DNA of 64,000 nucleotides from the NCBI GenBank assembly GCA_051294905.1, contig CM119378.1, positions 10,478,001 through 10,542,000 on the forward strand, read 5' to 3'. A program made the position numbers and the translations under genes. This DNA comes from Botryllus schlosseri. Lineage: Eukaryota. Positions within the stretch are counted from its first letter, which is position 1, and the number at the start of each line of letters is the position of its first letter. Shown here in pieces: positions 180-64,000 of the stretch. The notes under the pieces were generated by a model. That model was given only the letters and a program-made list of their open reading frames with translations, was not told the DNA's origin and searched no databases.

Positions 180-526
180 AAACGTGCCCCGAGCCGGTAT
201 TGGAGAATGGCTTTATCATGACATCAGATCTCGAAATCGGCTCGCGAATTGAGTTTCGATGCAATGATGGATACCAGTTAATCGGACGAGAATTAATCAC
301 GTGCACCAGTAATCTTGACTACGACTTTGACGCTCCGACATGCGAAGGTTTCTAAAGGAATCTAGATCGTATTGTGAACAAATTTGGTCAACCTCGCGAA
401 TTACAGATGTAAACGAATGTGAAGACAATCCGTGCCATCAACAAGCATCTTGTCAGAACATCGCCGGAAGCTTTCTGTGTATTTGCAACGAAGGATTTAT
501 TGGCGACGGGATAAATACATGCAAAC
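180..526 (+). CDS. Sushi/CCP exon followed by calcium-binding EGF exon
   Basis: 180-347 = TCPEPVLENGFIMTSDLEIGSRIEFRCNDGYQLIGRELITCTSNLDYDFDAPTCE (4-Cys CCP pattern). 407-526 = DVNECEDNPCHQQASCQNIAGSFLCICNEGFIGDGINTCK (DxNEC cbEGF). Both exons are phase 1-1. Confidence 0.95.
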
Positions 527-3500
527 GTATTTTGATTTTCGTAAACGCGAGGTAATAAGACGCGTCTAACCTCATTTTGCTCAATTCCAGCATCGTTACA
601 CATCGAATACTTCAGCTGCAGAAAAATAGACGGTAACTCTATTCAGATCAATTGGCAAATAAGACCCAAGGATTCCTCAAGTGTGGATCAGGTATTGGTA
701 CCGTTGGCACTATTGTAAAATGGACAATGATAATATCACAAGTATATATTTTATCTTAGATAATTGTGTCGTGGTCGGAAGCAGATAATTTCACTTACGA
801 AACACAGGAGGGCTTGAATGATTACTACAACGAATTTGAAAACTACGAGGACAAAGTGGATTCTATCAATGTAGGTTTAGAAGCCATGAATCCATCGTTC
901 TCAAGGTTATGTAATACGTGGAAATAATGCTAATTTTACATAGTCGGATGACTTTTCACTGGAGTACCGAACATTGGAAAAAGATCATACGTCGTATGTT
1001 GCCACTGGTTTAAAACCGGACACATTCTACGTTTTGCGACTCAGACTAAAGATATCTGATGGACTCGTGGAGAATCCAATACGGATGTGCTGGAAATCCA
1101 CGGGAAGTGAATGTAAGCTCACTCGAAGTTATACATTCCAATACTATGCTATTTGAATTTTCAAACTCATCTCACTGCCTTCAGGCAAAAGCTTCTCGAA
1201 TCCGATTTCAGGAGATGCTATTGTTACTTGTAATCTCGCCACGCCCATAGTTTATTGACATATGACTCATCTACAATATCGAATATATTTCTAGTGCCGC
1301 ATCCGGTCGAGAATTTCAAGGTTGTCCAGAATGGCGGGGATTACTTGTCACTGTCATGGGAACGTCCTAAGGTCACAAATGGACCGATACTTGGGTATAT
1401 AATAGAATACAGACAAGTATCATCGTGCGTTGGAACCGAGTGTTTCGAGACAATGAACAAGGAGGTATGTCTAGTAAACAATTCTACTAGGCAAGATTTT
1501 AATGTCCCGTGTGCAATATTTGGTATTGAAAAAAAATCATTGACATTCAACCTAGCATGCAGCAGTTTACTCACTCCTAATTAGAGCTGTGTGATTCGAT
1601 TTTTAATCGAGTATTAGGCTTCGAGTCAAATATCACTCATTATGACGCAGGGTTGTTATGACTCGAGACCCGAGTCGCGATTTTTTGGTGACTTGAGTCA
1701 TTTTCTACAAAATGAAAAATGACTCCAATCGAGTCAATTTGTGTATTGACTAGACTTGTGCTCGTGTCATTGCGCATGACTCGGACTCGAGACTGGGTAT
1801 ACCAAGACAGACATTTCATTGTAATTTCGAAGAATAGTAAAGTTATCACACTAATATTATTTTGTCTATCAGTACTGGTACTTGAAAATGCTATCAGAAA
1901 CTGTTAAAAGTGAGGAAAATGAGTAAATTGTGAATCAGAAGTCTTCGATATCACCGAGCAGAGTTGTGAAAAGTGGGTTTCACATGACATTAACTCGAAA
2001 CTGAACAGTCATTACAATAACTTGGACTCGGACTCGAGTCAAAACACGATGACTCGGACTCGACTGTCTACTCAATGACTTGGACTCGGACTTCACTCGG
2101 TGGTGAATTGAAAATGACTCGACTTGACTCGAGTCAAAACTATAAAAGTGAGATTGACTTGCGACTCGGAACCTTGTGACTTGGTTACAACCCTGTTATG
2201 ACGTCACAGCAACATGATGTTGTGTAAAGTTCAAATATGTACCTTTTACGCGGCCACAAAGATGATATCTTCGGTTCTACACCACATTAAATATGATATG
2301 GTATTTTTAGACCGTGTCTATTTCATTGCACGTTGTGACCAGGGTTGTAACCAAGTCGCAAGGTTCCGAGTCTAACGTCAATTTCATTTTTATAGTTTAG
2401 ACTCGAGTCAAGTCGAGTCATTTTCCATTCACCACCGAGTCAAGTCAGCTTGTAGAGGGTAGAGTTCGAGCCATAGAGTTTTGACTCGAGTCTGAGTCCA
2501 AGTCATCATGTTCACTGTTCAGTTTTCAGTTAAATACGGATCAACACACTTTTCTCAACTCTGCTGGAGTGATATAGAATGGCTCGCATTCATAATATTG
2601 TGATTTTCCTCAGTCTTAACAGTTTGTGGCCATATTTTCCAAGTATCAGGACTGATAGACGAAATACCAATAATGTGGTAACTTTACTATTCTTCGAAGT
2701 TACAATAAAATGTCTGCCTTGGCCGTCCTAGTCTCGAGTCAATAGAAAAATTGACTCAAGTCGAGTCATTTTACGCATTTGAAAATGTAACTCGAGTCAA
2801 GTCGAGTCACCAAAATATCGCGACTCGGGTTGGACTCGAGTGTCATTACAATCCTGGTTGTGACAATACTGTGGGTTGATCACGACATCACAGATATGAA
2901 ATTGTTCTTCGTGAATCGTATGCTGAAAAACGACCAATCGAGGTTTACAGCTTTCCACAGAGAAAAATAGTATCAAAATTAACATTCTCGTTAATAAATG
3001 AACTCTCAATGACGAGGAGCGTATAATTTCCGTACTCAAAAAAACTGTTTCCTACTACCCGACTCAAATCATTAGAATTCATACTCGATTCAGATTCGAG
3101 TGCTCCAGTCATTGTGTACATCCCTACTCCTGATCGCAACCAACATAAAATTACCGTGCTGACTGTATATGATGTTTTCGTGCACAGGTGCCAGGAAATG
3201 TATTCGACACCATCATTTCTCAACTCAACTCTACAGAGTCTTACGAACTCAAAATTGCCACTGTTAACACCGAAGGAATCAGTGAATATTCATCTCCAGT
3301 TACAGTTCAAACAAGTGAGAAACAGTTATTAGATCGGTGTACTAGGAGTTATAATTAAATTTCTTTGACTTCTAAAGCAGGAACAAAGTCGATCCATGAT
3401 GTGGTGAAACTGGATGATGAAATGCCAAATGACTCGGCTCCTGCAATCTGCTTCACGGTCAAGTTCATTCTACACATCTCCTGGCCCGAGCATCCTGCGC

Positions 3501-6500
3501 AGCATAGACTGCTTGAGCTAAATCTCAAAAACTTGGTATGATGTATCGTTTCTTATTCATTGAGACATTCCAATCATTACTGCTGTCTAATATTTATGAT
3601 ACATTTGGTGAAATATAGAATATCACTACTTACTGTTGTTTCGCGGAGCTATCTTCCTCACTCGAGATGAAAAATTGGGAATTTGAAACATGCACTTGAA
3701 AATTTACTCACCGTTCCGTGTGAAAAGCACTGCGATATATAGATTTGTGATTTTAACCTATTGTATGTATTATATATGCATAATTGCATAATGCATATGC
3801 ATACTGAATGATCTGTGAGACTGTACTCCTGAATTAAATGGAAATATTGGTTCAGATACAAAGTTCATTGAGTGAATCGGGTTCTCTGTACGTGAAGAAT
3901 CTCATTATCAGTGAAGTAGACGATTACACAAGTGCATATGCACAGATCTGGTTTGCGGACACTTCAAGTAAGTGTCAAATTTTATCAATTTTGATTTAGT
4001 TATTGGCACTTGAGATTAGTATCATTAATGCGACACTAATTTGGAATTTATATTGCCACAGATTTTGAGTATTCACTGTACAGTTTTTTGGAAATCAAGA
4101 GATTGATAATACAACGTTCAATTACTGATCCGTGGATGCAAAACCTTGTTCATGCTTCAGTTAATGTTTTTGGTGAGTATCAATGTTCATATGGTATGTC
4201 TCTTGATAGGAAAAATACAAAAGTAAAATATACGTATATGAATAGAATGAAACACATTCCGGGGTTGTGACCACGTCACAAGGTTATGTGGCAGGAGTAA
4301 TTCTCTGATTTTAACTTTGGACTTGAGACTGGTCAAATCCTAGTTCAAGTCATGATATGAGAGATTGGGAGACGTTCAAGTCATATTTTCTGTAACGAGT
4401 CTTTACGATTCATTTTGTATGACCTTCCTCTGACTACATTCAATGTAGGCTACCACATTCAACACGAGGCCTATTTATTCCACACTCGGTGATGAAAACG
4501 ATAGAATAGGCATATCCACAGTCTTCTCACTTCTTGTATGATTTCGATCACACTGATACAGTTTATAGGTTTATATTACAACAATTGGTGCTGGCAGAAT
4601 TGTATGGTATGTATGCCTAGGTGGATTTGTATTGCAGCCCGCCATTTTGATTGGGAGGGTATAATTAACTTGATATTCGTTCCTCTATTCAGAATTCACA
4701 GCGAATCAATCTGTGCTTCAATCATAGTGCAAATACAATGACGTGAATAATGCCTCATCATTCGAAAATTCGACTTGACTTAACTAGAGTAACCTTCAAA
4801 TATCCAGTGACTCGACTTGACTCGAGCCAAAACGACTTATGACTCGAAAATAGTGACTTGATATATAGGTAATTTATAGGTTAGGATAATGTAGCTGCTA
4901 TTTAAATAAAATGTGACGCTTGTGAGACTTGAAGGAATTTTGGAAGAATTATCAAATTTAATAAACTAATAATATTTTTGTTGATACAGAATGCAGTTCT
5001 TGTGATTTGAGCGTCATGAATGAATGCGGCAATGGTAGCAGCTGTGTTAACATGGAAGGAAGATATTTTTGTCAGTGTTTACCCCAACACTCACCAAAAA
5101 CATTTAGTCTTCATGGAAATTATCCGACATCTTGCGAAAGGCAAAGTGACGATCAACAAGTAACGATATATTTTTAATCAGCTGCGTGACTGTTTGAATT
5201 TAATAATAATTATTATATGACAGCAGTTTCTGAAGAATACAGATGACATATTTCCCAACTATGTGACTTGCAGCAAAGCCAAATATGATATCGTGTTCTT
5301 ATTGGATCATAGCCATAGCTTGAGTGAAGAATCTTTTGATTCGATCAAACGAACAATCATTGAATTTGTGAAGAGATTTGATATCGGCCCTTACGATACG
5401 CAAGTAAGATTTCTGGATTTTGAATATTTATCAGAATACCTAAAACTGATGTGTGTTTGTACACAATTTTCTAGGTTGGATTGGCCTTATATTCCCATGA
5501 TTCCAAAGTTGCATTTCATCTCAACGAATACAAATCGAAACAGCAGTTGATCAATGCCATTAATGGCCTGGTTTCAAATGGATTCGGTACCAATGCAGGA
5601 ATAGGTATTGTATTATAATTATCTATTTTCATTACTGCACTTTTATAATTATTGTAGTTGTAAAATGGGTAAGTTACACTGAGTTGCCCGCAAGTAATTA
5701 GAAACATTGAAGCATTCGTATGAATTCACCCAACACTTTTATTATTTTCACTAGCCTTACAAAAAATGCTTGACGATATGCTGATAGAATCTCGTGGTAG
5801 ACGCTCAACAAATGAACTACATATTGTTATGGTGACGGACGGAAAAAGCTCGGATGATGTTTCTGAAGAATCCAGAAACCTGCATTTGGTAAGTTCTGCA
5901 ACGGAAAAACATTAAGATTGTGATAAAAACATTACAATATCTTTTGAGAATTGCGTGCTTTCTTTTCAGTTGATATCGGCGATTCAACATCAGTACTGCA
6001 GTAACGTCACTATCAATGTATTATACACTATGCATGATTTACAATACCTTGTTGTCAATCTAAAGATCCTATATTGACATATTTGTTTTAATTACAGACT
6101 TCTTTGTGTACTGCACTTGTACCGTAATTGCAATTTTAATGATTGTCCTTGTATTTGATGTTGTATGTGAATACAAGTTCAAGGCATTTTTGATATGTTG
6201 TTTCAAGTTGCGTGTAATTAGCCTACATTGAGCCATTAATTTCGATCACCAAATTGTATTACTACCCTTCCAGTACATAGGGTCAGCATCGTGTTTGCAT
6301 AATAACTGCACTTGGATAATGGATATCTGTTAAAGCCAAGATTTATTTATTTAGGTTACTTGAAAGTATCTAATTCGTATTAAATACTGTTTTGTGCAGG
6401 TCTTTTATATTCCGCAGTCAGTTTGTTTATTTTATGTTATAATCTACCGTATGCTTTTCGAAGGTGTAAATCAGACTTGCGAATTCAGTATGAATTGTTT

Positions 6501-9500
6501 TTCTTCTGATCTCTGCTCTGGCTCTTGTGTAATAGACTCACGATGTCATTTTGCTGAATGTAATGTGATTGATATTTTTATCTATCTTAGGTTACTCCGC
6601 ACGTGAATGTAATCGGCATAGGCGATCGCGTTCAGGTCAATGAATTGAATACTATTGCCGGGAATCATGGAAGAGTTATTTTATACCCGGACACCACAAC
6701 GCTTTCCCAAAACATGGTACCAGCCCTGGGCGATTCAATCTGTCCGTGTAAGTTATAATATACTACATACTGTGGTAGAGAAAGTTTTTTATTCTTGTGA
6801 AATTATGGATAAGCTTTTTAAAGAAAAATATGCTTGCTTTTATACATCTTTACCCATACAATATTCAATGGAATATTTTATTCATATTTAAATAAATCCG
6901 AATATTTTCGGCTGGCACTCGTCATGGGTAATCGTCAGCAACTAGTAGATAATGGAAAAAAACGTCATATCTCAACAATCGTTTCCCAAAATATGACGTC
7001 ACCAGCATGAAATTTCGAATACGAGAACGTTCAATGTACTATTTTTATATGGTACAGGAACTCTTTTTGTCGACACAGCCTTGGTTGGTGTATTTTCTTA
7101 AAAGTCGACTCCAAGGCACACCAGCCAAGACTGTGTCAACAAAAAGAGGTCGTGTACCATCTAAAAATAGTACATTGAACGATCTCGTATTCGACATTTC
7201 ATGCTGGTGACTTCATATTTTGTGATACGATTGTTGAGACACGATGCTCTTTTGAATTCTTTACTAGTTGCTGATGATTACCCCTGACGAGTGTCAGCCG
7301 AAAATATTCGGGCTCATTTCAATATGAATATACTATTCAATTGTATATTGAAGTTCTGCACCTCAAAGAAGCTGTCCAAACAATATTGTAATTGTGATTG
7401 TAATTTTACGATAGTGCCCTTAGATGTAAATATATCATATTAGCCCACACATTATGTTCCACATACATGTAGAGATGCCAGGTAATAAGCTTATTTGTCT
7501 TTATATTATCATTGTCAGCATATGGATGCGATTATACTATGGACTATGTCGACTTGATTTTCGTTTTGGACTCAACATCATCAACAAACAAAGAAACGTT
7601 TGAAAAAATGAGGGATTTCACAGCAAGTTTCATATCAAAAGTTGAAACTGGAAGAAGGAATACATCAGTGAGATGCACAATTTTTTTAAAGTGAGTTATC
7701 GATGCTGAAAAAGTTCTTTGTCATTTTTTCCAAGGTGGGAGTTGCCATTGCGTCAAATGAAGTGGAATCAGCCTTTTCATTGAATCAGTACCCTAAAAAA
7801 GAAGACATTCTGTCGGAAGTCCAAGCGATCTCACACAGAGAATCAAATGCTGGTTTCGACACAGGAAAAGGTAATTCCCACATATCATTAGGAGTTTTAG
7901 ATATAGTCTTCCACTATGATCTGATTTTTTCTGTTGCGTGTGGTATATAATAAATGCATATGGAATATTTCTGTAAACCTAATATTCAATTAAATAGTAT
8001 ATTCATATTGAAATGAACCCGAATATTTTCGGCTGACACTCGTCAGGGGTAATCGTCAGCAACTAGTAGAGAATTGGAAAGAACATTGTATATCAACAAT
8101 CGTATCACAAAATATGACGTCACCAGCATGAAATTTCGAATGAGAGAGCGTTCAATGTACTATTTTTAGGTGGTACACGAACTCCTTTTGTTGACAGAGT
8201 TTTGGTTGGTGTATTTTGATAAAAGTTAATTCCAAGGCACACAAATGGAATTGTGAACGGCCTCGCCCTACGATTCGAAATCGGCCGTCTCGATTATTAT
8301 TCGCACAAATTGGATTATCCAACAGATGTTTGCCCGGCGAGGCCGTTCACAATTCCATTTGTGTGCCTTGGAATTAACTTTTATCAAAATACACCAACCA
8401 AAACTCTGTCAACAAAAGGAGTTCGTGTACCACCTAAAAATAGTACATTGAACGCTCTCTCATTCGAAATTTCATGCTGGTGACGTCATATTTTGTGATA
8501 CGATTGTTGATATACAATGTTCTTTCCAATTCTCTACTAGTTGCTGACGATTACCCCTGACGAGTGTCAGCCGAAAATATTCGGGTTCATTTCAATATGA
8601 ATATACTATTTAATTGTATATTGAAGTTCTGTACCTCCAAGAAGCTCTTCAAACCTAATATTATATAATTCATGTGTTTCAGTAGAATATTCATGCACAA
8701 GTGACAGGTTATCAATGTCACAAACTGTTTATATGTGAATGCGGGGAATGCTGTGTTCGCTTATCGATTTACAACTCATTTTTCAGTTCTGCAATACATC
8801 AATGATAAAATGGTATCCACCAAGGCAGGTAGGCGTTCTGGAGCTGGGTTGGCTATCGTATTCTTGATCTCAAAAGACACTGGTGTCGAATATGACTCTG
8901 TTATGGAGTCATTCCGGAGACATGAAGCTTCTATTATCATTTTGTCTCTCAGTGTAAGTTGATTTATGTATGAATCAATGCCCTCTTTACCCCCTCATTT
9001 TCTCACAGCAACCTGCGAGCAATTCCGCGTTGAAAGCTATTGTTTCACCATATGGCGCATTGTTCGATATCAACACGAAAGATTTGAAATCGCAAGATTT
9101 GGAAGGAAGAGTAATGGAAGAAGTGCGAAAATCTGCATCATGTGCCGGTAGACATGTTGACTATTTTATCAGAGGTATTTCTGTCTACCTGATCTATTTT
9201 ATCATATTTACAGGCATATTTCCACCAACTGATGTTAAAGTTAACGTCCTGAATGAAACCTCAGCATTGATATCATGGAAGAAACGGTCAAAAGTTGAAA
9301 ATTTTGAGCTTTATGTAAGTATTTCATCATTTTTGCGTCACATATCATGATTATATAATATTGAATAGTGTTTAAATCTACCATTTACATAATGCTTCAA
9401 ATTCTAAAATATTGTTGTTGAAATTGTGAGGACAGCTTTGTACAGCTATAAATTTCTTCTTGTTGCAACCCAGAGGAATGATTCAGCTGCTAAAAGGACA

Positions 9501-57500: not shown

Positions 57501-60500
57501 ATTTGAAGAAAATAAGTCAGTCAGGAACCAGATGGTACGCAGTCTAGTCAAAAAAGTAGAAAGAGATCGAAATAGTTGGAGAAACATATTCAATCCCGAC
57601 ATCTGCTTTCATAAAATGGTTTTCATACTTACAGTAGTCGTCACGTAATATACTATTGATCAGAATTGAGATGTAATTATAATATTTAAAATGGAGGTTT
57701 CACGTGTAAAGTCACTACGTGAAATTTCGAAGCAGATATTTTTCATTTAGAAGAGCACCAATCTTTATAAGGAATAAATACCGTGCTCTCCATCTTACTG
57801 AGCAACATTGTAATGCCATAGAGACATTACTTAAGGATCTAACTTGCATCATAAAATGGCATCTGATGTGTGACCTTGTGTATGATTTCTTATTTTTGCA
57901 GATGAAGAACCTTCACTATAATGAGAGAGATTTCGAATTTACCAACTTGGAATTCGATACCCAGTATGTTGTCACAGTTTGGGCTGTCAGTGGTGACAAA
58001 AGATCTGTTAATTCTTCAATTGTGATCAAGACAGGTAACGAATTTTCTATTATTATCTAGTGGTCTCTTTCTAATTTAATATAATGTGGATTTGTAGTCT
58101 AAATGACAGTCTGTTGGAAGGTAAGTTCCATACTTAAGCAAGTGTCCTACTACTACTTATCCTACTATTTCCAACTCTTTCCAATATTACTTCATACTCC
58201 ATTGAATGAGTACTGTATCTGAAATCATTATGGTTCATAGGTGTTTTCCTGTTTTGTATTAGAGCAGGTCTCTCCAAATAAAATGTGCTTGCAGGCCAAC
58301 GTCCTAGTTTTTTATGACTCCAGGGGCCGCAGCATCAATAGAGGTATTCAATGTTAGTCCAAGTAGGCCTTATTTGACTGGGTGAAATTGTCCGATTGAA
58401 AGTGAGCCGACTTTGCGGTCATTTTCATTTGTGACCGAGTCGGTCCGAGTCTGAGAAATTCTACGAAAGGTCGCGTCCAAGTCACAATTTTCAGTCACAA
58501 GTCATCTAGGCCGAGGTCATCATAAAGAGCCAATGTAATTACGTTTATATCATCTCTATTCTTAATAATTTATGCATTTGCAGAATGAATTGTACTTCAA
58601 ATATATTTTCCTCTGTTCAGATGAACCTCAACCTGGTGATATGTATGTCACTGCTACGCCTGTAACGGCTAATATTACTGCTTTTATTGGCTCATTTTCT
58701 GGAATCAAAAATATGTCGCTACATGTGCATAGAAACGACACCGGTCAAACTTTATATCGGCAATATGAAGAAGGAACTGAAGTTTGTATTTGTAGCTTTA
58801 GGATTTTCATAGCAATTTGTAAGACATTGTATTGAATATAGACGTACACAGTTTTCGTTGGAAGTCTTGTGCCAAATACTTCATATTACGTAAATCTCCA
58901 TGTATATGGTGAGGTGGATAGAAGTTATGAAAGAACCTTCAGAACAAGTACGTGGAAATCTCTTATCATTGATATTGTCACACATCATTGAAATTGTCTG
59001 TATAGTAGAATTAGTCATATTATGAGTATATATTTCTTGAAGTAATTAGGCCTGACTTATGGTGTCAGTGCACTATCAGGGGCCTCAAACTCAAATGTGC
59101 TCGCGGGCCAATCTCCTAGTTTTTGATGATGCCTCTGGCCTCAGCATCAATAATAGGGGTCTTCAATATATTTCCAATAGGCCTTATTCGACCGAGCCTT
59201 GTAGAATGGCATTCCACACACATCGCGAAAATGTGATATACTATCGCAATATTCACGCGTGAAAGGAAAAAAAATCACAATGGTAAATATTTTATTAAAA
59301 TTGTTGTTGTTCTTGGCATAACTTGTCAAAATAATGAGATACAGACACAATGCAAGGGGGCAAATGCATTATGAGATCGTAAAAGCTGTCGTGTTACAAT
59401 TTTGCAGCGAGCGGATACTTGACGTGCCACAATTATAGGTACAATATTTTAGAATTTAACAAGGATTAATCTGATTTCACAGCATTTGAGCAGTGTAATC
59501 CAACCAAGGTTTCGGACCTACTCCTGATAAGTGGGCTATTGATCATGTCATTGCCAAAGTCTAATTGAATCAGCGTTACATTTACCTTGGGATATTGTCA
59601 CAAGTAACAAGTCCTTCTCTAATTTTAACTTTTGAACCGACTCAACTCGAGTCATTTTCATTTTATCACCCGAGTTCGAGTTTGAGTAATTCTACGAAAG
59701 ATTGCGCATAAGTCGAAATCCTAATTCTCAGTCACGAATCATCAACAGGTCATGTGTTATCATCGTAAACTGGTAATGTGACGTAAAATCAGATCTTCCA
59801 TCGCATGGTAGCTTTTGAAAGTGATGTGATACTGAAGTTTGATGAGTATGTTTTTGGAGCATTGTTGGATTGAGATTTAAGTTCTCAAATCTCAGAAAGA
59901 TACGTGGCAGTTAAATATTGTCGAATACTTGAAAATCCAGAATGGCGACGCAGGCCACACAAAATGTTCTTGCGGGCCCGTGTTTGAGACCTCTGCCCTA
60001 TATTTTTCAAACAATGAATTTTGGGAATAATTCATGACTTGGTGGTTGACATCGACAACAGCATTGCAAACTAGCATACTTGACAAATTTGTAGGCATAT
60101 CTGGTTTTGGTCTACTTTGGGGTAATATCTTACTAAAGGGGATAGGTCGTCAAAGTAGTCAAGGAAGGTATATTCAAGTAAAAGTAGAAGTATTAACACA
60201 AAATTCTACTCAAGTATGAGTATAAGTAGTGTTTTTAGGAACCTGCCTAAATCTATTACAAGTAGATATAGAATTTGCTCACTTTGAAAACTGCGCAAGC
60301 AGGTAAGTCGTTCTTAAAAGCAGTCATGCTGTCATGACTGCTAAAAGGTGAAAACTGGCATATGCGGTGCATTTGGTAGAGAGGTATTATTAACGACCGT
60401 GCTTCAAATGATGGAAATGGAAATGATGGGAAAATTCTGGACTATACTTAACTAATTAACATCCCATCCCATTAGATTACATTCAACTCAAGTTAACAGT

Positions 60501-63500
60501 CCAGGCAATGAGCGTCACATAATACAAACTATGTGAATCGCCTTGGACAATATTTTACTAGTAGTATCGCGATGTTATGAGGCTGGTAGATGTGGTGGCA
60601 AATCCGTTGCTCGTCATCTAGCAGAATTACGATTAAAATAAATTTGCATTGAGCTGAACCCTGCAATCAGCACCTGTCAAGACGGAACTGATGATAAACA
60701 TATAATACCTTATACCCCCTTACCATTATTATATTATATGCATCCTTGACGAAGCTGGTCTTATCCATAATCCTAATTCAAGATATGAACACAAGTGGAT
60801 GTCGTGAGCGAGACACTGTCAAGGTGAAAATAGACCCTGAATGTCTCCGTCTCGGTCTCATTCTCTGTCATTGGAAAATCATAATACTTCAACTAACCAA
60901 CAGGAACTAAGTTACAAGTAATGAATAAGTAACAACATATCATGAAGAAGAAGTAGTTACTTACTCGAGTAAGTACCGCCAGTAGAAGAAAAATACCTGA
61001 GTATTTGAAAAAAACTAGAAGTACATCACTACTGTCCAATATCTGTTAAATGGTATGCATGTAATCAATCATACATTTCCAATATTGGATACTATTGATA
61101 TCATGATCTACTTTCCTGAGGCCTGTATTACATGTACAATGTACAATTGTACATATCTGATGTGTCTTGCACATAGCAGCAGAAAATAAAATTTGTCTCA
61201 TTTGATATGTGATGATCGTTATTATCGGTATTATATCATCTTGCAATTGTAATGCCAATGCAATTGTATTTTAATCCGATTGATCATAATGAATGTGCAA
61301 TGTGCATGTGTGCAATTATATTTCAAGATTGCAGTGGCTTCTTATTGACCCCATTCCTGAATAAGTCATAATAATTAGTTATATCAGTCAGTAGTAGGGA
61401 TGGTCAAGTTCTGTGCAATAAATTAGTGTGCCATTCAATGTGTGGGAAATCAAAATTAAAGCTTCAACACAATATACTGTTTTATCACAGTGCCGCTGCG
61501 TGAACCTTCTAATGTACGAGTCGAATTCCTATCTCCAATTTCATTTCGAGTTTACTGGGACGGCGATGAATATGTCAAGGTATTTTTAAAGAGAAATTCA
61601 AGAGCAATCAGTGTTTCATTAGTTTAAAATACCATGTCTGCAGGAGTATGAGATTTTTGTGACGGAAAATGACCGAAAAAACAGATCGAAAGAATATACG
61701 AATATCGTAAAAGAGACAGAATATGAAGTGGAAAATGGGGACCCGGGTACACAATATGTGATTAGAATAACTGGATCAGCTGGAGGAAAAAGATCCGAAA
61801 CTGTTGAAAAACGGGTGAATCTAGGTAAGATTTGAGATTTCCAGAAACATGCTAAATTGACCTGAAAATATAATTTCAAATATCATTGAGTTTTTACATA
61901 ATGAAAGTGCTAGCTCGCTGTCAGGAATAACTTCGTAGATCTTTTACCTGATGCGATAAAAAGTATTCTTTTACTGTCCCTCTCCCTCTCTCTCTCAACG
62001 AGAGAAACCTATTTTAAAACGACTTCACTTATATAGCTTGGAGTATGAACATTAGGGATATTATGCATTTAATAATTACTGTTAAAATATTGTGATTTAT
62101 TTTATTATTATATTCGTAATCACTTAAGATAATCATAAACTTTACCACATTATATTGACCAACAACTTTCAAATGGAACGGTGGCAGAGGCAGAAAGATT
62201 CAATGCAGAGATTTTTTGCACGTGTGAGGTATGCAGATACCTGGTTCACAAAGAATGTTAATGTTAATGGCCTTGCCCCTTTACTGACAATTTCATGCAT
62301 TTATGCCTTATGCATTATATAGCGTAAAGTATCTACATTTGGAAGAAGTGGTCTCGGTGTGGGTTTATACTAAAAGTTATACATTCTACCACTACTTCAA
62401 GATCCACCACCGCTGATCGACGTGACTCTGGTGCCTGGCCCAGAAGATGTGACCGTTGTCGTGGATGCACTGCCCGAAGTCGAAGAGATCAGGTAGCTAT
62501 CGTGCTCTCGATACAGCGATTCTTTCCTTTCTTACACGATGTCGCCTCCGAAAGGGTGTTGATCAAAGATCCCGAGGGAGAAACTGTTGTGAACGAAACG
62601 GAAGAGATCGTGCCTGGTGAGGAATTCAACAAAACGTACGATTCGCTCGAGCCGTTCAAGAATTACACCACCGAAATTACTCCTGTGGTCGATGGGAAAG
62701 ACGAGGAACCAGAGAAGAACGACTTCACCACAGGTTCGAACCGTTTTCCTTTTCCTTCCCTCGACACAGAATCACACGCAGCCGTTCGGTGTTAGTTCTA
62801 TATCCAACTGTCGGAGAGGATGGCTACTATCCTCCAGCTGCAACTGAGTCGAGAGACTTACAGATTCGACGGTTATATTGCAACGAAGCAAGCACATTTA
62901 TAGCCTATACAGCAGCTCAATGCGTCATAAAACTGCCAACTGCTTCTAGCCAAGCTAGGAAAACGACAGACCGATTCGCTTCCCTTTTTCAATCAGCATG
63001 CTACACAGTACACGACACATGATTCGTCTTGTCACCTGAGGTCGCACCAGGGCGGTTACATAGGTCCGCGTGCATTTCGAACTGTCGTTATCGTGTTTTC
63101 TTTGCAGTCGGCAAGAAATTGGCATCTTTGGATGTTACCGATAAGGGAGAGGACTTCTTGGATGTCGAGGCAGTGGCAAGCGACGATTCCATCGATGGCG
63201 TAGTGTTCAAACTCACACGTCCGGATGGATCAAGCGAAGAGCAAGTTGAGGTTTGTTGGCTGTTGTTTCCCTTCCCTGATCTGGCGTTGTTTTCATTCGA
63301 TCGACCTGATGTTACTTTAGGAGAGTCCGGCGGAAGACCTGACGTACAAAACAACGTTTGACGAATTGGACCCAGACACCACTTACGATATCGAAGCTCA
63401 CCCAGTTGTCGACGACGAGCAAGTCGGTCCAGCTGAGAAAGTCACTGAAGCGACCGGTGAGGAAAACTTTCAGAGTATTTCCCGGATGGGAATGGCTACT

Positions 63501-64000
63501 TATACCGTGTCTGTGTTCAGATCGGTCGTTATTGAGCGATTTCACTGCGACGCCGACCCACGAAGACGTTACCCTCGAAGCAGATCCGGCGCCAAAAGTC
63601 GATGCCATCAAGTAAGTGATCTCGATCCGTTTTCTATGTCTCTCCTGCCCTCCTCACCCTCTCTTTCTATCTGTCTTTTTCAGGGTATCGATCGAGGACG
63701 AAAACGGAACGTCAGTCGTTGAGGAAACCGTGCCGGTTACTCCCGGGGAGAAATTCGACGAGACCTATCCCATGGAACCGAACAAAACTTACACCGCCAC
63801 CGTTACCCCACTTTCGAACGGAACTGAAGGGAAGCCGATAGAAAAGGAGTTCACAACAGGTTGGTGGAAGCCCGAATGCTAGCTGTCGAACTTTGTCTGC
63901 GAATCGGCCATTTGACGCTTGCCTGACGACAGCCTTTCGTGACGCGAGCTCGTAATGCTTTTAGATCCAACGCCGCTGATCGACGTGACTCTGGTGCCTG
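180..64000 (+). CDS. Giant multi-exon ECM protein (Sushi/EGF/SEA-like/4xVWA/~49xFN3), 5'- and 3'-partial
   Basis: Manual exon tracing; all splice phases are consistent. Exons: 180-347,407-526,591-691,760-870,944-1112,1295-1464,3188-3314,3378-3535,3856-3967,4062-4172,4990-5159,5227-5403,5475-5604,5755-5888,6591-6747,7519-7667,7735-7870,8787-8953,9009-9147,9214-9314,10282-10450,11514-11715,11910-12069,12404-12584,12793-12938,13199-13337,13404-13436,13810-13930,14012-14163,14401-14497,14553-14731,15298-15506,15577-15691,15965-16078,16376-16446,16541-16706,16766-16863,16935-17106,17164-17212,17331-17614,18646-18757,19212-19390,19551-19642,19702-19897,20006-20151,20210-20339,20408-20470,20775-20917,21251-21365,21426-21511,21756-21936,22333-22505,23454-23589,24575-24666,24726-24912,25472-25623,25686-25821,25888-25979,26420-26609,28269-28420,28485-28620,29182-29333,29423-29558,29784-29941,30000-30135,30576-30733,30793-30928,31767-31924,31983-32118,32473-32630,32689-32824,33412-33569,33629-33764,34040-34140,34247-34436,34738-34889,34950-35085,35335-35441,35500-35686,35918-36072,36496-36628,36700-36750,36821-36966,37124-37241,37314-37402,40533-40731,40932-41059,41133-41268,41746-41918,42151-42250,42862-42950,43021-43186,43367-43509,43634-43766,46111-46277,46456-46567,47832-47920,48006-48183,48795-48940,49036-49165,49533-49675,51952-52090,52588-52633,52714-53003,53419-53533,53596-53765,53822-53985,54659-54779,54846-54931,56353-56554,56610-56752,57902-58034,58621-58781,58842-58947,61491-61579,61644-61824,62402-62492,62555-62733,63108-63250,63321-63456,63521-63611,63684-63859,63965-end. 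A few weak donors (15506, 19642, 37241) could shift by some codons. Confidence 0.9.
591..3314 (+). CDS. FN3 domains 1-2
   Basis: SIQINWQ...YVATGLKPDTFYVLRL and PHPVENFKVV...LSLSWERPKVTNGPILGYIIEY / IISQLNSTESYELKIATVNTEGISEYS show the FN3 W/Y and LxPxTxY motifs. Confidence 0.92.
1648..2195. mobile_element. hAT-type MITE, GACTCGAGTC-rich family, copy 1
   Basis: TIR CAGGGTTGT...ACAACCCTG; perfect 8-bp TSD TTATGACG (1640-1647 and 2196-2203). Confidence 0.92.
2340..2856. mobile_element. hAT-type MITE, same family, copy 2 (inverted relative to copy 1)
   Basis: Starts CAGGGTTGTAACCAAGTC, the reverse complement of the copy 1 end; perfect 8-bp TSD GTTGTGAC (2332-2339 and 2857-2864). Confidence 0.92.
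3378..4172 (+). CDS. SEA-like domain (3 exons)
   Basis: The in-phase exons give ICFTVKFILHISWPEHPAQHRLLELNLKNLIQSSLSESGSLYVKNLIISEVDDYTSAYAQIWFADTSNFEYSLYSFLEIKRLII. The strand/helix pattern resembles SEA by eye; no GSVVV motif. Confidence 0.5.
4290..4865. mobile_element. Degenerate fragments of the GACTCGAGTC MITE family
   Basis: TGACTCGACTTGACTCGAG motifs at about 4765-4860 and a decayed match at about 4310-4440; no intact TIR or TSD. Confidence 0.5.
4990..5159 (+). CDS. EGF-like exon
   Basis: CDLSVMNECGNGSSCVNMEGRYFCQCLPQH...TSCE. Confidence 0.9.
5227..6747 (+). CDS. VWA domain 1 (intact MIDAS)
   Basis: DIVFLLDHSHS (DxSxS), GFGTNAGIALQ and VMVTDGKSSDDV, spread over 4 exons. Confidence 0.95.
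6861..7380. mobile_element. Foldback (long inverted-arm) element, copy 1
   Basis: CCGAATATTTTCGGCTGGCACTCGTCA... pairs with ...TGACGAGTGTCAGCCGAAAATATTCGG; arms of about 230 bp with almost no spacer. Confidence 0.85.
7519..9147 (+). CDS. VWA domain 2 (degenerate MIDAS)
   Basis: DLIFVLDSTSS...VGVAIASNEV...FDTGKVLQYI...IVFLISKD. Same 0/1/0/1 intron-phase pattern as VWA1. Confidence 0.9.
7981..8654. mobile_element. Foldback element, copy 2 (longer, more perfect)
   Basis: Arms about 7981-8265 and about 8336-8622 are near-perfect reverse complements; homologous to 6861-7380. Confidence 0.88.
9214..17106 (+). CDS. FN3 domains 3-11 with linker micro-exon
   Basis: Nine FN3 units, e.g. PPTDVKVNVLNETSALISW/LLPGKKYAV, YPRDIKLV..IELQWTEVENAQGY, NLLPGNRYTFTVVTRSGDQ. 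A 33-nt micro-exon lies at 13404-13436. Confidence 0.88.
10966..11234 (-). pseudogene. Antisense intronic ORF with SAM-/death-domain-like motif (exon or relic)
   Basis: Stop-free frame ECQNITNWLSKQGIPPTVYEKLETETVMPVVLQVLVVKGINWGATASELSFSTQDIAKFLAKYAVSEQSCSDMLRTT in a more GC-rich island of an AT-rich intron. No ATG at the 5' end; possible acceptor TATGCAG. Domain likeness judged by eye only. Confidence 0.4.
17164..19390 (+). CDS. Pro/Thr linker and VWA domain 3
   Basis: PKCHVFKRKLDLTFILSTTQGVSNQDFNYMRRLI...LVSVIEFN...SSIGVGDEVTTSLLKQLAT...DIDC. Confidence 0.9.
19551..29558 (+). CDS. FN3 domains 12-21
   Basis: Two-exon FN3 units with phase-1 boundaries and a recurring IARADxP motif. Confidence 0.9.
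22853..23344. mobile_element. Kolobok/T2-type foldback MITE
   Basis: TTAA|AGGGGCACTGCG...CGCAGTGCCCCT|TTAA, with about 220-bp inverted arms around a spacer of about 50 nt. TTAA TSD plus RR termini is the Kolobok/T2-MITE signature. Confidence 0.88.
26745..27973. mobile_element. Non-autonomous hAT element with AGTAG/AAGTA-rich subterminal repeats
   Basis: TIR CAGAGGTGGTCA...TGACCACCTCGG; TSD AATTTAAG/AATTAAAG (1 mismatch). Confidence 0.8.
29784..32824 (+). CDS. FN3 domains 22-25 (two-domain unit duplicated in tandem)
   Basis: Exon lengths 158/136/158/136 occur twice, and the AGLPAPLVGLNVRDIEMTSLRATF exon is nearly identical in both copies. Confidence 0.95.
31020..31358 (-). mobile_element. 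tRNA-derived SINE
   Basis: Minus strand begins GGGGAGATAGCGTAGTGGTG (A box) ... CTGGGTTAGATTC (B-box-like) and ends in a GCATTGTGTCTTGTC-type simple-repeat tail. Absent from the paralogous intron of duplicate copy 2. Confidence 0.7.
33059..33180 (+). repeat. 42-bp minisatellite, ~3 copies
   Basis: Unit GCATAAAAACATTTCACAAATTAGATTAGAATTAGAATTAGA at 33059, 33101 and 33143. Confidence 0.85.
33412..52090 (+). CDS. FN3 domains 26-40
   Basis: Two-exon FN3 units, e.g. LEIDGLEPGTLYEIRV, FKDLLPQTEYEVEI, VTGLEPGLRYEV. A 51-nt micro-exon lies at 36700-36750. Confidence 0.9.
38193..38478. mobile_element. Degenerate hAT MITE nested in 37679-40108
   Basis: Begins CATTGCTTCCTAATC and ends GGTTAAGAGCCCCTG (decayed CAG..CTG termini); no clean TSD. 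Confidence 0.5.
38739..39683. mobile_element. hAT (Buster-type) MITE nested in 37679-40108
   Basis: TIR CAGTGGTTCCCAACC/GGTTGGGAGCCACTG; TSD GATTGACA/GATTAACA. The minus strand near 38930-38970 reads LVVKKQLHASH, resembling a Buster transposase C-terminus. Confidence 0.85.
39058..39355. mobile_element. hAT MITE, third nesting level
   Basis: TIR CAGCGGTTCTCAAACT/AGTTTGAGAACCACTG; perfect TSD CACTAGCT. Confidence 0.92.
40203..40390 (+). mobile_element. Possible tRNA-headed SINE fragment
   Basis: GCCGCCGTAGTTTGGTGGTTGAAGCAC resembles a tRNA 5' half with an A box; the B box is poor. Confidence 0.35.
44488..45703. mobile_element. Non-autonomous hAT element
   Basis: TIR CAGGGGTTCTCA/TGAGAACCCCTG; perfect TSD CTCTAACC; GGGCCAC subterminal repeats; a CAGGGCCG-type fragment lies inside at about 45386. 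Confidence 0.92.
45768..46030. mobile_element. Small MITE with 36-bp perfect TIRs next to a (TA)n tract
   Basis: ATATCGTCGCAGTGGAATCAAAGTATCTTATGTCCA ... TGGACATAAGATACTTTGATTCCACTGCGACGATAT. Confidence 0.85.
46587..47439 (-). mobile_element. Internally deleted Buster-family hAT transposon
   Basis: TIR CAGTGGTACTCAACC/GGTTGATAACCACTG; TSD CGTTAGGC/TGTTAGGC; contains a transposase relic. Confidence 0.9.
46860..47070 (-). pseudogene. hAT Buster transposase C-terminal relic
   Basis: Minus frame KLQDELLDRND*...L*SYPKVSPKELRLIITFTTTYICGNGFSELVHIKSK matches the Buster/Charlie YPxL..A...L.PF.TTYLCE.GFS.L..IKSK motif, with stops. Confidence 0.8.
50582..50797. mobile_element. Short hAT (Charlie-like) MITE
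   Basis: TIR CAGGGGTCACCAACTC/GAGTTGGTGACTCCTG; TSD ACCTAGAG/GCCTGGAG. Confidence 0.8.
50985..51809. mobile_element. hAT MITE with TAGGG termini
   Basis: TIR TAGGGCAAGTTTTTG/CAAAAACTTGCCCTA; perfect TSD GTTATAAT; AAAAGTTGCA subterminal repeats. Confidence 0.92.
52588..53765 (+). CDS. Gly/Ser linker and VWA domain 4
   Basis: PACARNETSLHVIFMVSTHRNVSYKEYKLTRDLI...LASVIEIN...LVYVITT...RFIVVGG...DIEC. Exon sizes and phases parallel VWA3. Confidence 0.85.
53822..61824 (+). CDS. FN3 domains 41-45
   Basis: E.g. SLKPNTRYLLEI, PKNLNVT..INVEW, FTNLEFDTQYVVTVWAVSGDKRS. Confidence 0.9.
54310..54425. mobile_element. Left-arm fragment of the foldback family at 6861/7981
   Basis: AAACCCAAATATTTTCGGCTGATGCTCGTCAGAGGTAATCGGCAGAAACAAGTAGAGAATTG matches the arm start of both full copies. 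Confidence 0.75.
57165..57410 (+). pseudogene. hAT Buster transposase C-terminal relic
   Basis: IPVSTWECEQEFSVLISSNSKSEKRITEHIPDLRCAMSNGIPRMDKLL resembles PFSTTYLCEQGFS...KSK.RNRL...DLR.ALS..PRIDKL. A hAT-like left end (CCAGGTTCTCAAACT) lies at about 56813. Confidence 0.75.
58262..58530. mobile_element. Deleted copy of the 37679/59077 hAT family
   Basis: The 5' part (CAAGTAGGCCTTATTTGAC) is joined directly to the CCGAGTC-rich internal part. Confidence 0.65.
59077..59995. mobile_element. hAT MITE, uninterrupted relative of 37679-40108
   Basis: CAGGGGCCTCAAAC...GTTTGAGACCTCTG; collinear similarity with both flanks of the nested copy; TSD not clean. Confidence 0.85.
60141..61045. mobile_element. 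Degenerate relative of the 26745-27973 AAGTAG-rich hAT element
   Basis: GGTCGTCAAAGTAG...AAGTAGAAGTA left end and GAAGTAC..TACTGTCCAATATCTG right end; TSD not recognisable. Confidence 0.6.
62402..64000 (+). CDS. Acidic GC-rich FN3 domains 46-48 and start of the next repeat unit
   Basis: DPPPLIDVTLVPG.../YDSLEPFKNYTTEITP, FDELDPDTTYDIEAHP and YPMEPNKTYTATVTP. The exon start at 62402 recurs almost exactly at 63965. Confidence 0.9.

What the first reader, a model, noticed from the sequence alone, without database searches (positions are those of the whole stretch)
180..64000. Titin-scale ECM gene: ~49 FN3 + 4 VWA + SEA-like + Sushi/EGF with no end in sight
More than 5,700 aa of uninterrupted, phase-consistent coding sequence, and both termini lie outside the window. 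VWA interleaved with FN3 recalls collagen XII/XIV (established knowledge). I recall no characterised protein that combines Sushi-EGF-FN3-SEA-EGF-VWA-VWA at the front with about 49 FN3. This may be a lineage-specific giant matrix or adhesion protein that automatic annotation would fragment (inference).
Basis: partly seen in the sequence, partly recalled or inferred. Interest (0 to 1): 0.72.

Follow-up and report, generated by a model that had tools for sequence, protein, structure and literature searches.

The report
Titin-sized sea-squirt matrix gene
The window holds the front fifth of one expressed sea-squirt gene for an extracellular protein that then runs into 99 near-identical six-exon cassettes, giving about 340 fibronectin-type beads and roughly 32,000 residues, which would rival titin as the largest animal protein.

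Summary
On the + strand there is one phase-consistent chain of about 110 exons. That makes 45-46 FN3 plus 3 more at the window's end.

The main new result lies at 62,402. There the gene enters a 1,563-bp tandem array of exactly 99 units (about 155 kb, neighbouring units about 99.5% identical, GC 50% against 37%). Each unit has six GT-AG exons that encode 272 residues, as three very acidic FN3-like domains.

All 52 units I could read, and all 99 copies of one exon, are open. Transcriptome contigs show every intron of the unit spliced, unit joined to unit, and the last unique exon joined to the first array exon. Array exons have 83-107 times the depth of the unique exons in two of three runs.

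The implied product has about 32,000 residues, about 700 exons and at least 3.5 MDa. Neither end of the gene was secured. I found no orthologue and no description in the literature. Function is inferred only: a giant polyanionic, extensible matrix tether or fibre.

The parts
180..347 (+). Sushi/CCP exon; phase-1 acceptor and phase-1 donor
   Evidence: Pfam Sushi E 1.8e-8; splice sites read
407..526 (+). Calcium-binding EGF exon (DVNECED...)
   Evidence: Pfam EGF_3 1e-9 and EGF_CA 1e-8
591..3314 (+). Two FN3 domains (exons 591-691, 760-870, 944-1106, 1295-1464, 3188-3314)
   Evidence: Pfam fn3; exon chain
3378..4540 (+).
   Evidence: No Pfam match; candidate frames
4965..5174 (+). EGF-like exon (weak)
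   Evidence: Pfam hEGF 8e-4 and EGF 3e-3, both below the curated cut-off
5224..6747 (+). VWA 1, metal-site motif D-H-S-H-S kept (exons 5224-5403, 5475-5604, 5755-5888, 6591-6747)
   Evidence: Pfam VWA profile positions 1-45, 40-79 and 85-127 on successive exons
7519..9147 (+). VWA 2, metal-site motif D-S-T-S-S kept
   Evidence: Pfam VWA E 1.9e-6; exon chain
9214..17106 (+). FN3 block I: 9 domains, mostly two exons each (phase 1 / 0 / 1)
17331..19390 (+). VWA 3 (three exons), metal-site motif lost
   Evidence: Pfam VWA 4.7e-11; closest solved chain is collagen VI alpha-3
19551..52090 (+). FN3 block II: 29-30 domains, including a duplicated two-FN3 cassette (29,784-30,928 and 31,767-32,824; 95% and 90% identical)
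52714..53765 (+). VWA 4-like, diverged, metal-site motif lost
   Evidence: Blank in Pfam; BLASTP E 1e-9 to VWA 3 and the same exon phases
53822..61824 (+). FN3 block III: 5 domains; the last four exons (58,621-58,781, 58,842-58,947, 61,491-61,579, 61,644-61,824) are confirmed by RNA joints
   Evidence: read laying joints
62402..64000 (+). First unit, and the start of the second, of the 99-unit 1,563-bp cassette array. Exons: A1 62,402-62,492; A2 62,555-62,733; B1 63,108-63,250; B2 63,321-63,456; C1 63,521-63,611; C2 63,684-63,859; next A1 at 63,965. The array runs on to about window coordinate 217,030 (C8:10,695,027)
59077..60000 (.). Interspersed repeat inside an intron (not part of the protein); source of a spurious RNA depth peak

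Best explanation
This is one transcribed gene for a giant extracellular protein.

Head. The protein starts with an adhesive head: a probable signal peptide and one cadherin-like exon upstream of the window (inferred), then Sushi, a calcium-binding EGF, 2 FN3, EGF and two VWA domains with intact metal-ion sites.

Rod. A rod of about 44 diverse FN3 domains follows, interrupted by two VWA domains that have lost their metal sites.

Array. The rod leads into 99 near-identical cassettes of three acidic FN3-like domains. Each cassette is 272 aa, has pI about 4, net charge about -52, six N-glycosylation sequons and no Cys or Trp.

Shown: the exons, their splicing, the link between rod and array, the open frames and the copy number.

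Inferred: the whole array sits in most mRNAs. That would give a chain of about 32,000 aa, about 340 FN3 and at least 3.5 MDa. At roughly 3.5 nm per FN3 this is about 1.2 micrometres long when folded.

Likely working (inference from the known mechanics of FN3 chains in titin, tenascin and fibronectin). The head binds matrix or cell-surface partners. The long, glycosylated, polyanionic bead chain acts as a hydrated spacer or as an extensible tether or fibre that can give way by domain unfolding and may bind cations.

Array evolution. The array is kept uniform by unequal crossing-over or gene conversion. GC-biased gene conversion is a plausible cause of its raised GC, which is seen in introns as well as exons.
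For: Gene model against controls.

Domains: Pfam; solved FN3 structures at E 1e-23.

The array in DNA:
- Period 1,563 bp, with neighbouring units about 99.5% identical.
- A 32-mer occurs 96 times at 1,563-bp steps on C8 only.
- Exon C2 is present exactly 99 times at 97-100% protein identity, none with a stop, and nowhere else in the genome.
- All 52 units read carry an intact 816-nt coding sequence, and their only length changes lie in introns.

The array domains are FN3-like. Against an HMM of 38 spliced unique FN3 domains they score E 3e-5, 9e-6 and 4e-8, while the best of 999 shuffles scores 0.04. hhalign gives 95.8% over 87 columns.

RNA:
- There are GT..AG joints at all five introns within the unit.
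- A 'goes back 1,458' joint shows C2 spliced to the next unit's A1.
- Joint 61,822>62,400 links the last unique exon to A1 in a 1,053-nt contig that also spans three upstream introns.
- Depth of array contigs against unique contigs is 1,913-2,462 vs 23 (run X2) and 497-531 vs 5.8 (run X13). That is 83-107 fold, matching 99 copies.

Composition.
Against: - Neither end of the gene was seen. The DNA 3' of C8:10,695,027 could not be fetched, so a stop codon, a membrane anchor or a collagen tail is unknown.
- The upstream signal-peptide exon rests on sequence and phase alone.
- Contig depth is a rough measure, and 3' bias could inflate it. The third run (X1) gives ratios of 50-280.
- All cassette borders are phase 1, so any number of units could be skipped without breaking the frame.
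- The link between the unique part and the array rests on one contig in one run, with 40 nt on the array side.
- Variants among units show no purifying selection: 6 synonymous against 28 non-synonymous, dN/dS about 1.4.
- Single array exons give no Pfam hit, and no fold prediction was possible for a spliced domain.
- No orthologue was found, and there is no protein-level evidence.
Confidence: 0.7

Rival explanations
1. The gene is the same, but the array is a splicing reservoir. Mature mRNAs carry only a variable handful of cassettes, so the proteins are about 6,000-10,000 aa and differ in length.
For: Every cassette begins and ends in phase 1, so skipping keeps the frame. No read can span the array. 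Human titin and LPA show that repeated exon blocks are used variably (established knowledge).
Against: Array exons are 83-107 times deeper than the adjacent unique exons in two independent runs. That is the ratio expected if nearly all 99 units are kept. No joint from the last unique exon to anything other than the first A1 was reported.
Confidence: 0.15
2. The array is a young coding macrosatellite that expanded neutrally, or is partly an assembly artefact. It is transcribed, but it does not contribute a selected, stable protein part.
For: dN/dS among units is about 1.4. Exon and intron diversity are similar, 0.0024 against 0.0033. No orthologous array was found in the databases.
Against: Domains A and C are only 44% identical and B is 28% identical to C. 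The three-domain cassette is therefore old, even though its copies are uniform. All 99 C2 exons and all 52 units read are open. The introns keep canonical sites and are spliced. The RNA depth ratio agrees with the assembled copy number.
Confidence: 0.1
3. It is a hugely expanded FACIT (collagen XII/XIV-type) chain, with its TSPN domain and short triple helix lying beyond the array.
For: Four VWA domains are interleaved with FN3 runs, as in the NC3 arm of collagen XII (PMC2199960). The VWA domains are of the collagen VI / VWF-A type.
Against: There is no Gly-X-Y run of six or more triplets in the 40 kb upstream plus the window. The Sushi and EGF head is foreign to FACITs. The genome-wide collagen scan was uninformative.
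Confidence: 0.07
4. The window holds two or more separate genes: a head gene from Sushi to VWA2, and an FN3 gene.
For: A head-only duplicate exists upstream, covering window -10.6 kb to +9.2 kb and nothing beyond. The head can therefore exist as a unit. RNA was laid only on 58,400-63,950.
Against: An unbroken phase-consistent chain runs through the whole window with no forced break. There is no terminal or initial exon signal and no strand change. Exon style and intron size are uniform.
Confidence: 0.06

Closest known systems
Collagen XII / XIV (FACIT) NC3 arm
   Same: VWA domains are interleaved with long FN3 runs in a secreted matrix protein. There are four VWA domains, as in long-form collagen XII. 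The VWA domains are of the collagen VI / VWF-A type.
   Different: The head is Sushi plus EGF. No TSPN or triple helix was seen. There are 45 or more diverse FN3 instead of 18. The 99-cassette array has no counterpart. The size is about ten times larger.
C. elegans DIG-1 (13,100 aa; PMC1904197)
   Same: It is a giant secreted adhesion protein that combines EGF, VWA, FN3 and a Sushi domain with a large repetitive core.
   Different: DIG-1 has many Ig domains and its own repeat types. No orthology is shown. DIG-1 is less than half the size and has no multi-exon cassette array.
Titin (muscle)
   Same: The scale is similar (about 30,000-36,000 aa), as is a bead chain rich in FN3, hundreds of exons and internally duplicated exon blocks.
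   Different: Titin is intracellular, built from Ig and FN3 super-repeats with a kinase and a PEVK region. This protein has extracellular modules, glycosylation sequons and no Ig or kinase in the part that was read.
Human LPA kringle IV-2 repeat (established knowledge)
   Same: It is a multi-exon coding cassette repeated in tandem, with near-identical copies that each add one folded domain in frame.
   Different: LPA has a two-exon 5.5-kb unit in 1 to about 40 copies. Here the unit has six exons, three domains and 99 copies.
Tenascins and fibronectin
   Same: They are extracellular FN3 chains with elastic behaviour, and they are the best sequence matches among solved structures.
   Different: No heptad or EGF array or fibrinogen globe (tenascin) and no FN1/FN2 modules (fibronectin) were seen.

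Membership tests
FACIT collagens (XII/XIV/XX) | Collagen triple-helix (Gly-X-Y) segments | tested here: inconclusive
   There are none in the 40 kb upstream, the window or the first array units. The region 3' of the array is unread, and the genome-wide PF01391 scan was uninformative.
FACIT collagens (XII/XIV/XX) | TSPN/LamG domain before the helix | not tested
   It would lie beyond C8:10,695,027, where no sequence was available.
FACIT collagens (XII/XIV/XX) | VWA domains interleaved with FN3 repeats | tested here: met
   and the exon chain.
R3 receptor tyrosine phosphatases (all-FN3 ectodomain) | Cytoplasmic PTP domain encoded 3' of the FN3 exons | tested here: not met
   PF00102 gave 153 matches in the genome. 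None lies on C8 between 10.5 and 10.8 Mb; the nearest are at 7.4-7.7 Mb.
Fibronectin type III domain (the array cassettes) | Sequence match to the FN3 profile, including the L-x-P-x-T-x-Y core of strand F | tested here: met
   The HMM of the unique FN3 domains gives E 3e-5 to 4e-8 against 0.04 for the best shuffle, and hhalign gives 95.8%. The motif is visible in A2, B2 and C2. Single exons give no Pfam hit.
Fibronectin type III domain (the array cassettes) | Seven-strand beta-sandwich fold | not testable with these tools
VWA domain with metal-ion-dependent adhesion site | D-x-S-x-S motif | tested here: met
   VWA 1 has DHSHS and VWA 2 has DSTSS. VWA 3 and VWA 4 lack the motif (translations).
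SEA domain | Match to the SEA profile / G-S-V-V-V cleavage motif | tested here: not met
   No Pfam hit at E <= 1 on the candidate exons. No GS[VI][VI] motif was seen in the frames.
Titin / twitchin family | Ig-FN3 super-repeats and a kinase; intracellular | tested here: not met
   Only extracellular modules (Sushi, cbEGF, VWA) and FN3 were found, with no Ig hit in the Pfam tallies. Unchecked notes from this scan place this genome's titin on another contig.

The most novel reading that the evidence does not exclude
The gene makes a single secreted chain of about 32,000 or more residues from about 700 exons. That would be the largest extracellular protein, and the gene with the most exons, yet described in an animal. 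Its length would be set by a 99-copy multi-exon cassette array, kept uniform by concerted evolution and probably variable in copy number between individuals. This would give a natural, tunable-length, micrometre-scale polyanionic FN3 fibre.
Probability: 0.45. Interest if true: 0.9.

Novelty: new variant of a known kind. Interest (0 to 1): 0.8.

Why it matters
If most cassettes are kept in the mRNA, this rivals titin in length and roughly doubles titin's exon count. Unlike titin, it is outside the cell. That would show that micrometre-long bead-chain proteins are not confined to muscle.

It is also an extreme natural case of a multi-exon coding tandem array: 594 spliced exons that are about 99.5% alike. 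This bears on several questions:
- How the spliceosome pairs identical sites in order.
- How concerted evolution and GC-biased conversion shape coding repeats.
- How annotation pipelines and short-read assemblies miss such genes.

For sea-squirt biology it points to an unstudied major matrix component. Candidate sites such as the tunic, the feeding net or an adhesive are pure conjecture. Head and cassette probes would let this be tested directly.

Tried and rejected
I did not try to read it by other means. The array's extent comes only from match coordinates.
- A whole-unit DNA search of the genome was not scored because there were too many candidates. A first pattern typed from a back-translation was wrong.
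- Tandem Repeats Finder is blind to a 1,563-bp period.
- The orthologue hunt was blank. The representative search with VWA 3 gave only multi-VWA proteins and one 109-aa fragment. Two word-based searches with array exons returned only an unspliced ORF of the window itself, or nothing. The length limits of these tools mean that blanks say little.
- Pfam was blank on single array exons, on the SEA-like exons and on VWA 4.
- The R3 phosphatase reading was prompted by Dep-1-type Fn3 hits. It is rejected because no PTP domain lies nearby.
- The collagen scan of the genome was uninformative.
- My first curated exon list lost the frame between 3,967 and 5,224, where exons are still missing. The exact exon borders there, at 25,900-26,436 and at 49,676-51,892 are unresolved.
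- Rfam and tRNA scans of the window found nothing.
- Four literature searches found no description of such a gene.
- No structure or complex prediction was run. Spliced domains have no usable reference, and I did not type sequences in.

Full report
WHERE IT IS. The window is G000:C8:10,478,001-10,542,000, + strand, in a 495-Mb genome. Earlier, unchecked notes of this scan call the animal a sea squirt. GC is 35-40% up to about 62 kb and then jumps to 47-50%.

IS THE GENE THERE? I wrote a simple exon-chain finder. It scores codon log-odds and bootstrapped splice-site matrices, and uses dynamic programming under strict phase compatibility.
- On the + strand it returns one unbroken chain through the whole window.
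- With no breaks allowed, the + strand of 1-62,400 gives 108 exons, 15.1 kb and 1,081 bits.
- The - strand gives 19 exons, 1.4 kb and 51 bits. Shuffles give 12-15 exons and 25-39 bits.
- The model was trained on the + strand, so the contrast is somewhat inflated, but it is very large.
- Ten exon borders at the 3' end could be checked against RNA. The chain at penalty -7 had nine of them exactly right.

The typical FN3 is split into two exons with phases 1 / 0 / 1.

DOMAINS. Pfam confirms the following:
- Sushi (180-347) and calcium-binding EGF (407-526).
- fn3 at several exons, and a weak EGF (4,965-5,174).
- VWA on successive exons of VWA 1 (profile positions 1-45, 40-79, 85-127), on VWA 2 and on VWA 3.

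VWA 1 and VWA 2 keep the D-x-S-x-S metal site (DHSHS, DSTSS). VWA 3 and VWA 4 have lost it. VWA 4 is blank in Pfam, but it is 26% identical to VWA 3 (E 1e-9) and shares its three-exon, same-phase layout. The nearest solved VWA is collagen VI alpha-3, followed by the VWF A domains.

I count 45-46 FN3 in the unique part: 2 before VWA 1, 9 between VWA 2 and VWA 3, 29-30 between VWA 3 and VWA 4, and 5 after VWA 4.

A profile of the 48 C-terminal half-domain exons (alignment A1) hits fibronectin and tenascin structures at E 1e-23 to 1e-8. The matches fall on the C-terminal halves of their FN3 domains. Taken singly, 14 of the 48 exons reach Pfam fn3.

The 'SEA-like' region is not confirmed.

THE ARRAY. 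From 62,402 the sequence is a 1,563-bp tandem repeat, with neighbouring units about 99.5% identical. It fills all 80 kb that I could fetch downstream.
- A 32-mer from it occurs 96 times in the genome. All copies are on C8, + strand, at 1,563-bp steps from 10,540,410 to 10,693,579, with three double steps.
- The translated C2 exon is found exactly 99 times at 97-100% identity, never with a stop. The last copy is at 10,694,854-10,695,027. The only other candidates are the 99 paralogous A2 exons.
- The array therefore has 99 units over about 154.6 kb and ends near window coordinate 217,030.

Each unit has six exons with canonical GT-AG introns of 62-374 nt: A1 91 nt, A2 179, B1 143, B2 136, C1 91, C2 176. 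They sum to 816 nt, or 272 codons, in frame from unit to unit.

In the 52 units I read, every coding sequence is 816 nt and open. The two length variants lie in introns. Diversity is 0.0024 in exons and 0.0033 in introns. There are 6 synonymous and 28 non-synonymous variants, so dN/dS is about 1.4. These are young, effectively neutral differences.

ARE THE CASSETTE DOMAINS FN3? Single exons give nothing in Pfam. Spliced domains A, B and C do match an HMM built only from 38 spliced FN3 domains of the unique part.
- The E-values are 3e-5, 9e-6 and 4e-8, against 0.04 for the best of 999 shuffles.
- hhalign gives 95.8% over 87 columns.
- They carry the L/E-P-x-x-x-Y-x-h-x-h core, but no Trp and no Cys.
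- A and C are 44% identical. B is 28% identical to C and aligns with A over only 23 residues. None is close to any unique FN3.

So the cassette is old while its copies are uniform. That is the signature of concerted evolution. GC is 0.53 in exons (0.59 at third positions) and 0.48 in introns, against about 0.37 elsewhere. GC-biased gene conversion would explain this, but that is an inference.

A unit has 69-72 Asp+Glu and 20 Lys+Arg (net charge about -52), pI 4.05 and six N-x-S/T sequons.

RNA. Runs were sought with window 58,400-63,950. Fourteen transcriptome-like runs from four studies hold 17-25% of its words, which is about the exonic share. I laid three of them plus one raw RNA-seq run on that stretch.

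The GT..AG joints are:
- 58,781>58,842 and 58,947>61,491. These revealed two exons my model had missed.
- 61,577>61,642.
- 61,822>62,400, the last unique exon joined to array exon A1. This comes from run X2, in a 1,053-nt contig of depth 23 that also spans the three upstream introns.
- All five introns inside the unit.
- 63,857>62,400, reported as 'goes back 1,458'. This is C2 spliced to the next unit's A1.

Contig depths of array exons against unique exons are 1,913-2,462 vs 23.1 (X2) and 497-531 vs 5.8 (X13). That is 83-107 fold, close to the 99 genomic copies. X1 is noisier, at 50-280 fold. This is the main support for most units being present in the average transcript, and it independently supports the assembled copy number. 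It is a rough measure, and 3' bias could inflate it.

The depth peak at 58,958-59,143 belongs to an interspersed repeat in the intron.

SIZE. The unique part is about 5,000-5,800 aa and the array adds 26,928 aa. That is roughly 32,000-32,700 aa, about 700 exons, about 97 kb of coding sequence and at least 3.5 MDa before glycosylation. The array alone is 2.95 MDa.

ENDS.

5' end. Exon 180 needs an upstream phase-1 donor. The 40 kb upstream holds no FN3-like exon on either strand. It does hold two candidates:
- A good candidate first exon at about -10,335 to -10,086 (MREGGGEAAIWLVLYFAALA|CD..., ending RYKRQ, phase-1 donor).
- A weak cadherin-like exon at -5,400 to -5,245, phase 1-1.

Both are unverified.

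A head-only duplicate lies upstream. It matches the candidate first exon at 91% (C8:10,315,221), and window -1,365 to 9,222 at 82-90% (C8:10,338,700-10,359,432). Neither VWA 3 nor the last 9 kb has a second copy in the genome. That the candidate first exon is duplicated together with the head fits its belonging to this gene, but does not prove it.

3' end.

WHAT IT IS NOT.
- It is not an R3 receptor phosphatase. No PTP domain lies within megabases on that side.
- It is not shown to be a FACIT collagen. There is no Gly-X-Y in what was read, the 3' part is untested and the collagen genome scan was uninformative.
- It is not titin. Its modules are extracellular and it has no Ig, and unchecked notes of this scan place this genome's titin on another contig.

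By domain set, the nearest described protein is C. elegans DIG-1: 13,100 aa with EGF, Ig, VWA, FN3 and one Sushi domain (PMC1904197). By layout of VWA among FN3, it is the NC3 arm of collagen XII (PMC2199960). By repeat genetics, it is the LPA kringle IV-2 cassette (established knowledge). I found no orthologue and no paper describing this gene. The protein tools cannot see long relatives of short queries, so that blank is weak.

HOW IT LIKELY WORKS (inference). The head is adhesive: Sushi, cbEGF and two metal-site VWA domains. It is followed by a bead chain about 1.2 micrometres long when folded. The distal 80% of the chain is a uniform, heavily acidic, glycosylated FN3 polymer.

Such a chain should behave as a hydrated polyanionic spacer, or as an extensible tether or fibre that yields by sequential domain unfolding, as FN3 chains do in titin, tenascin and fibronectin. 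It may also bind cations. The tissue and the binding partners are unknown.

VERDICT. The gene structure and its expression are well supported. Full-length inclusion of the array is probable but indirect. The termini and the function remain open.

Noticed in passing
G000:C8:10,315,221-10,359,432 (118-163 kb upstream of the window): A partial, head-only duplicate of this gene: candidate first exon, Sushi, cbEGF, 2 FN3, EGF, VWA 1 and VWA 2 at 82-91% DNA identity, stretched by insertions. It has no copy of VWA 3, of the last unique 9 kb or of the cassette array. Whether it is a separate gene or a pseudogene is open.
   Followed up: partly
window 59,077-60,000: An interspersed repeat in an intron, with thousands of genomic copies (7,761 first-look candidates, 74-86% identity). 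It gives RNA contig depth of 250-1,000 that has nothing to do with the host gene.
   Followed up: partly
window 7,982-8,672: A palindromic, MITE-like element that matches both strands of many loci. It has copies 98-100% identical on at least a dozen contigs, so it was recently active.
   Followed up: no
window 29,784-30,928 and 31,767-32,824: A two-FN3 cassette duplicated in tandem inside the unique part (95% and 90% protein identity). It is an earlier, small-scale version of the process that built the 99-unit array.
   Followed up: partly
window -10,335 to -10,086 (L005:9,665-9,914) and -5,400 to -5,245 (L006): A candidate first exon with a signal-peptide-like start and an R-Y-K-R furin-type site, and a weak cadherin-like exon. 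Both are in phase 1 and so compatible with exon 180. They are untested by RNA.
   Followed up: partly
window 62,390-64,000 and downstream: GC rises from about 37% to about 50% across the array, in introns (48%) as well as exons (53%). This points to a recombination-linked process such as biased gene conversion rather than to codon choice.
   Followed up: partly
Logan contig of SRR25569784 (protein P0031): A 109-aa fragment 57% identical to the whole VWA 3 exon, including its degenerate metal site (FILSTTQGVS). It is the only sign of a relative in another sample. The organism was not identified.
   Followed up: partly
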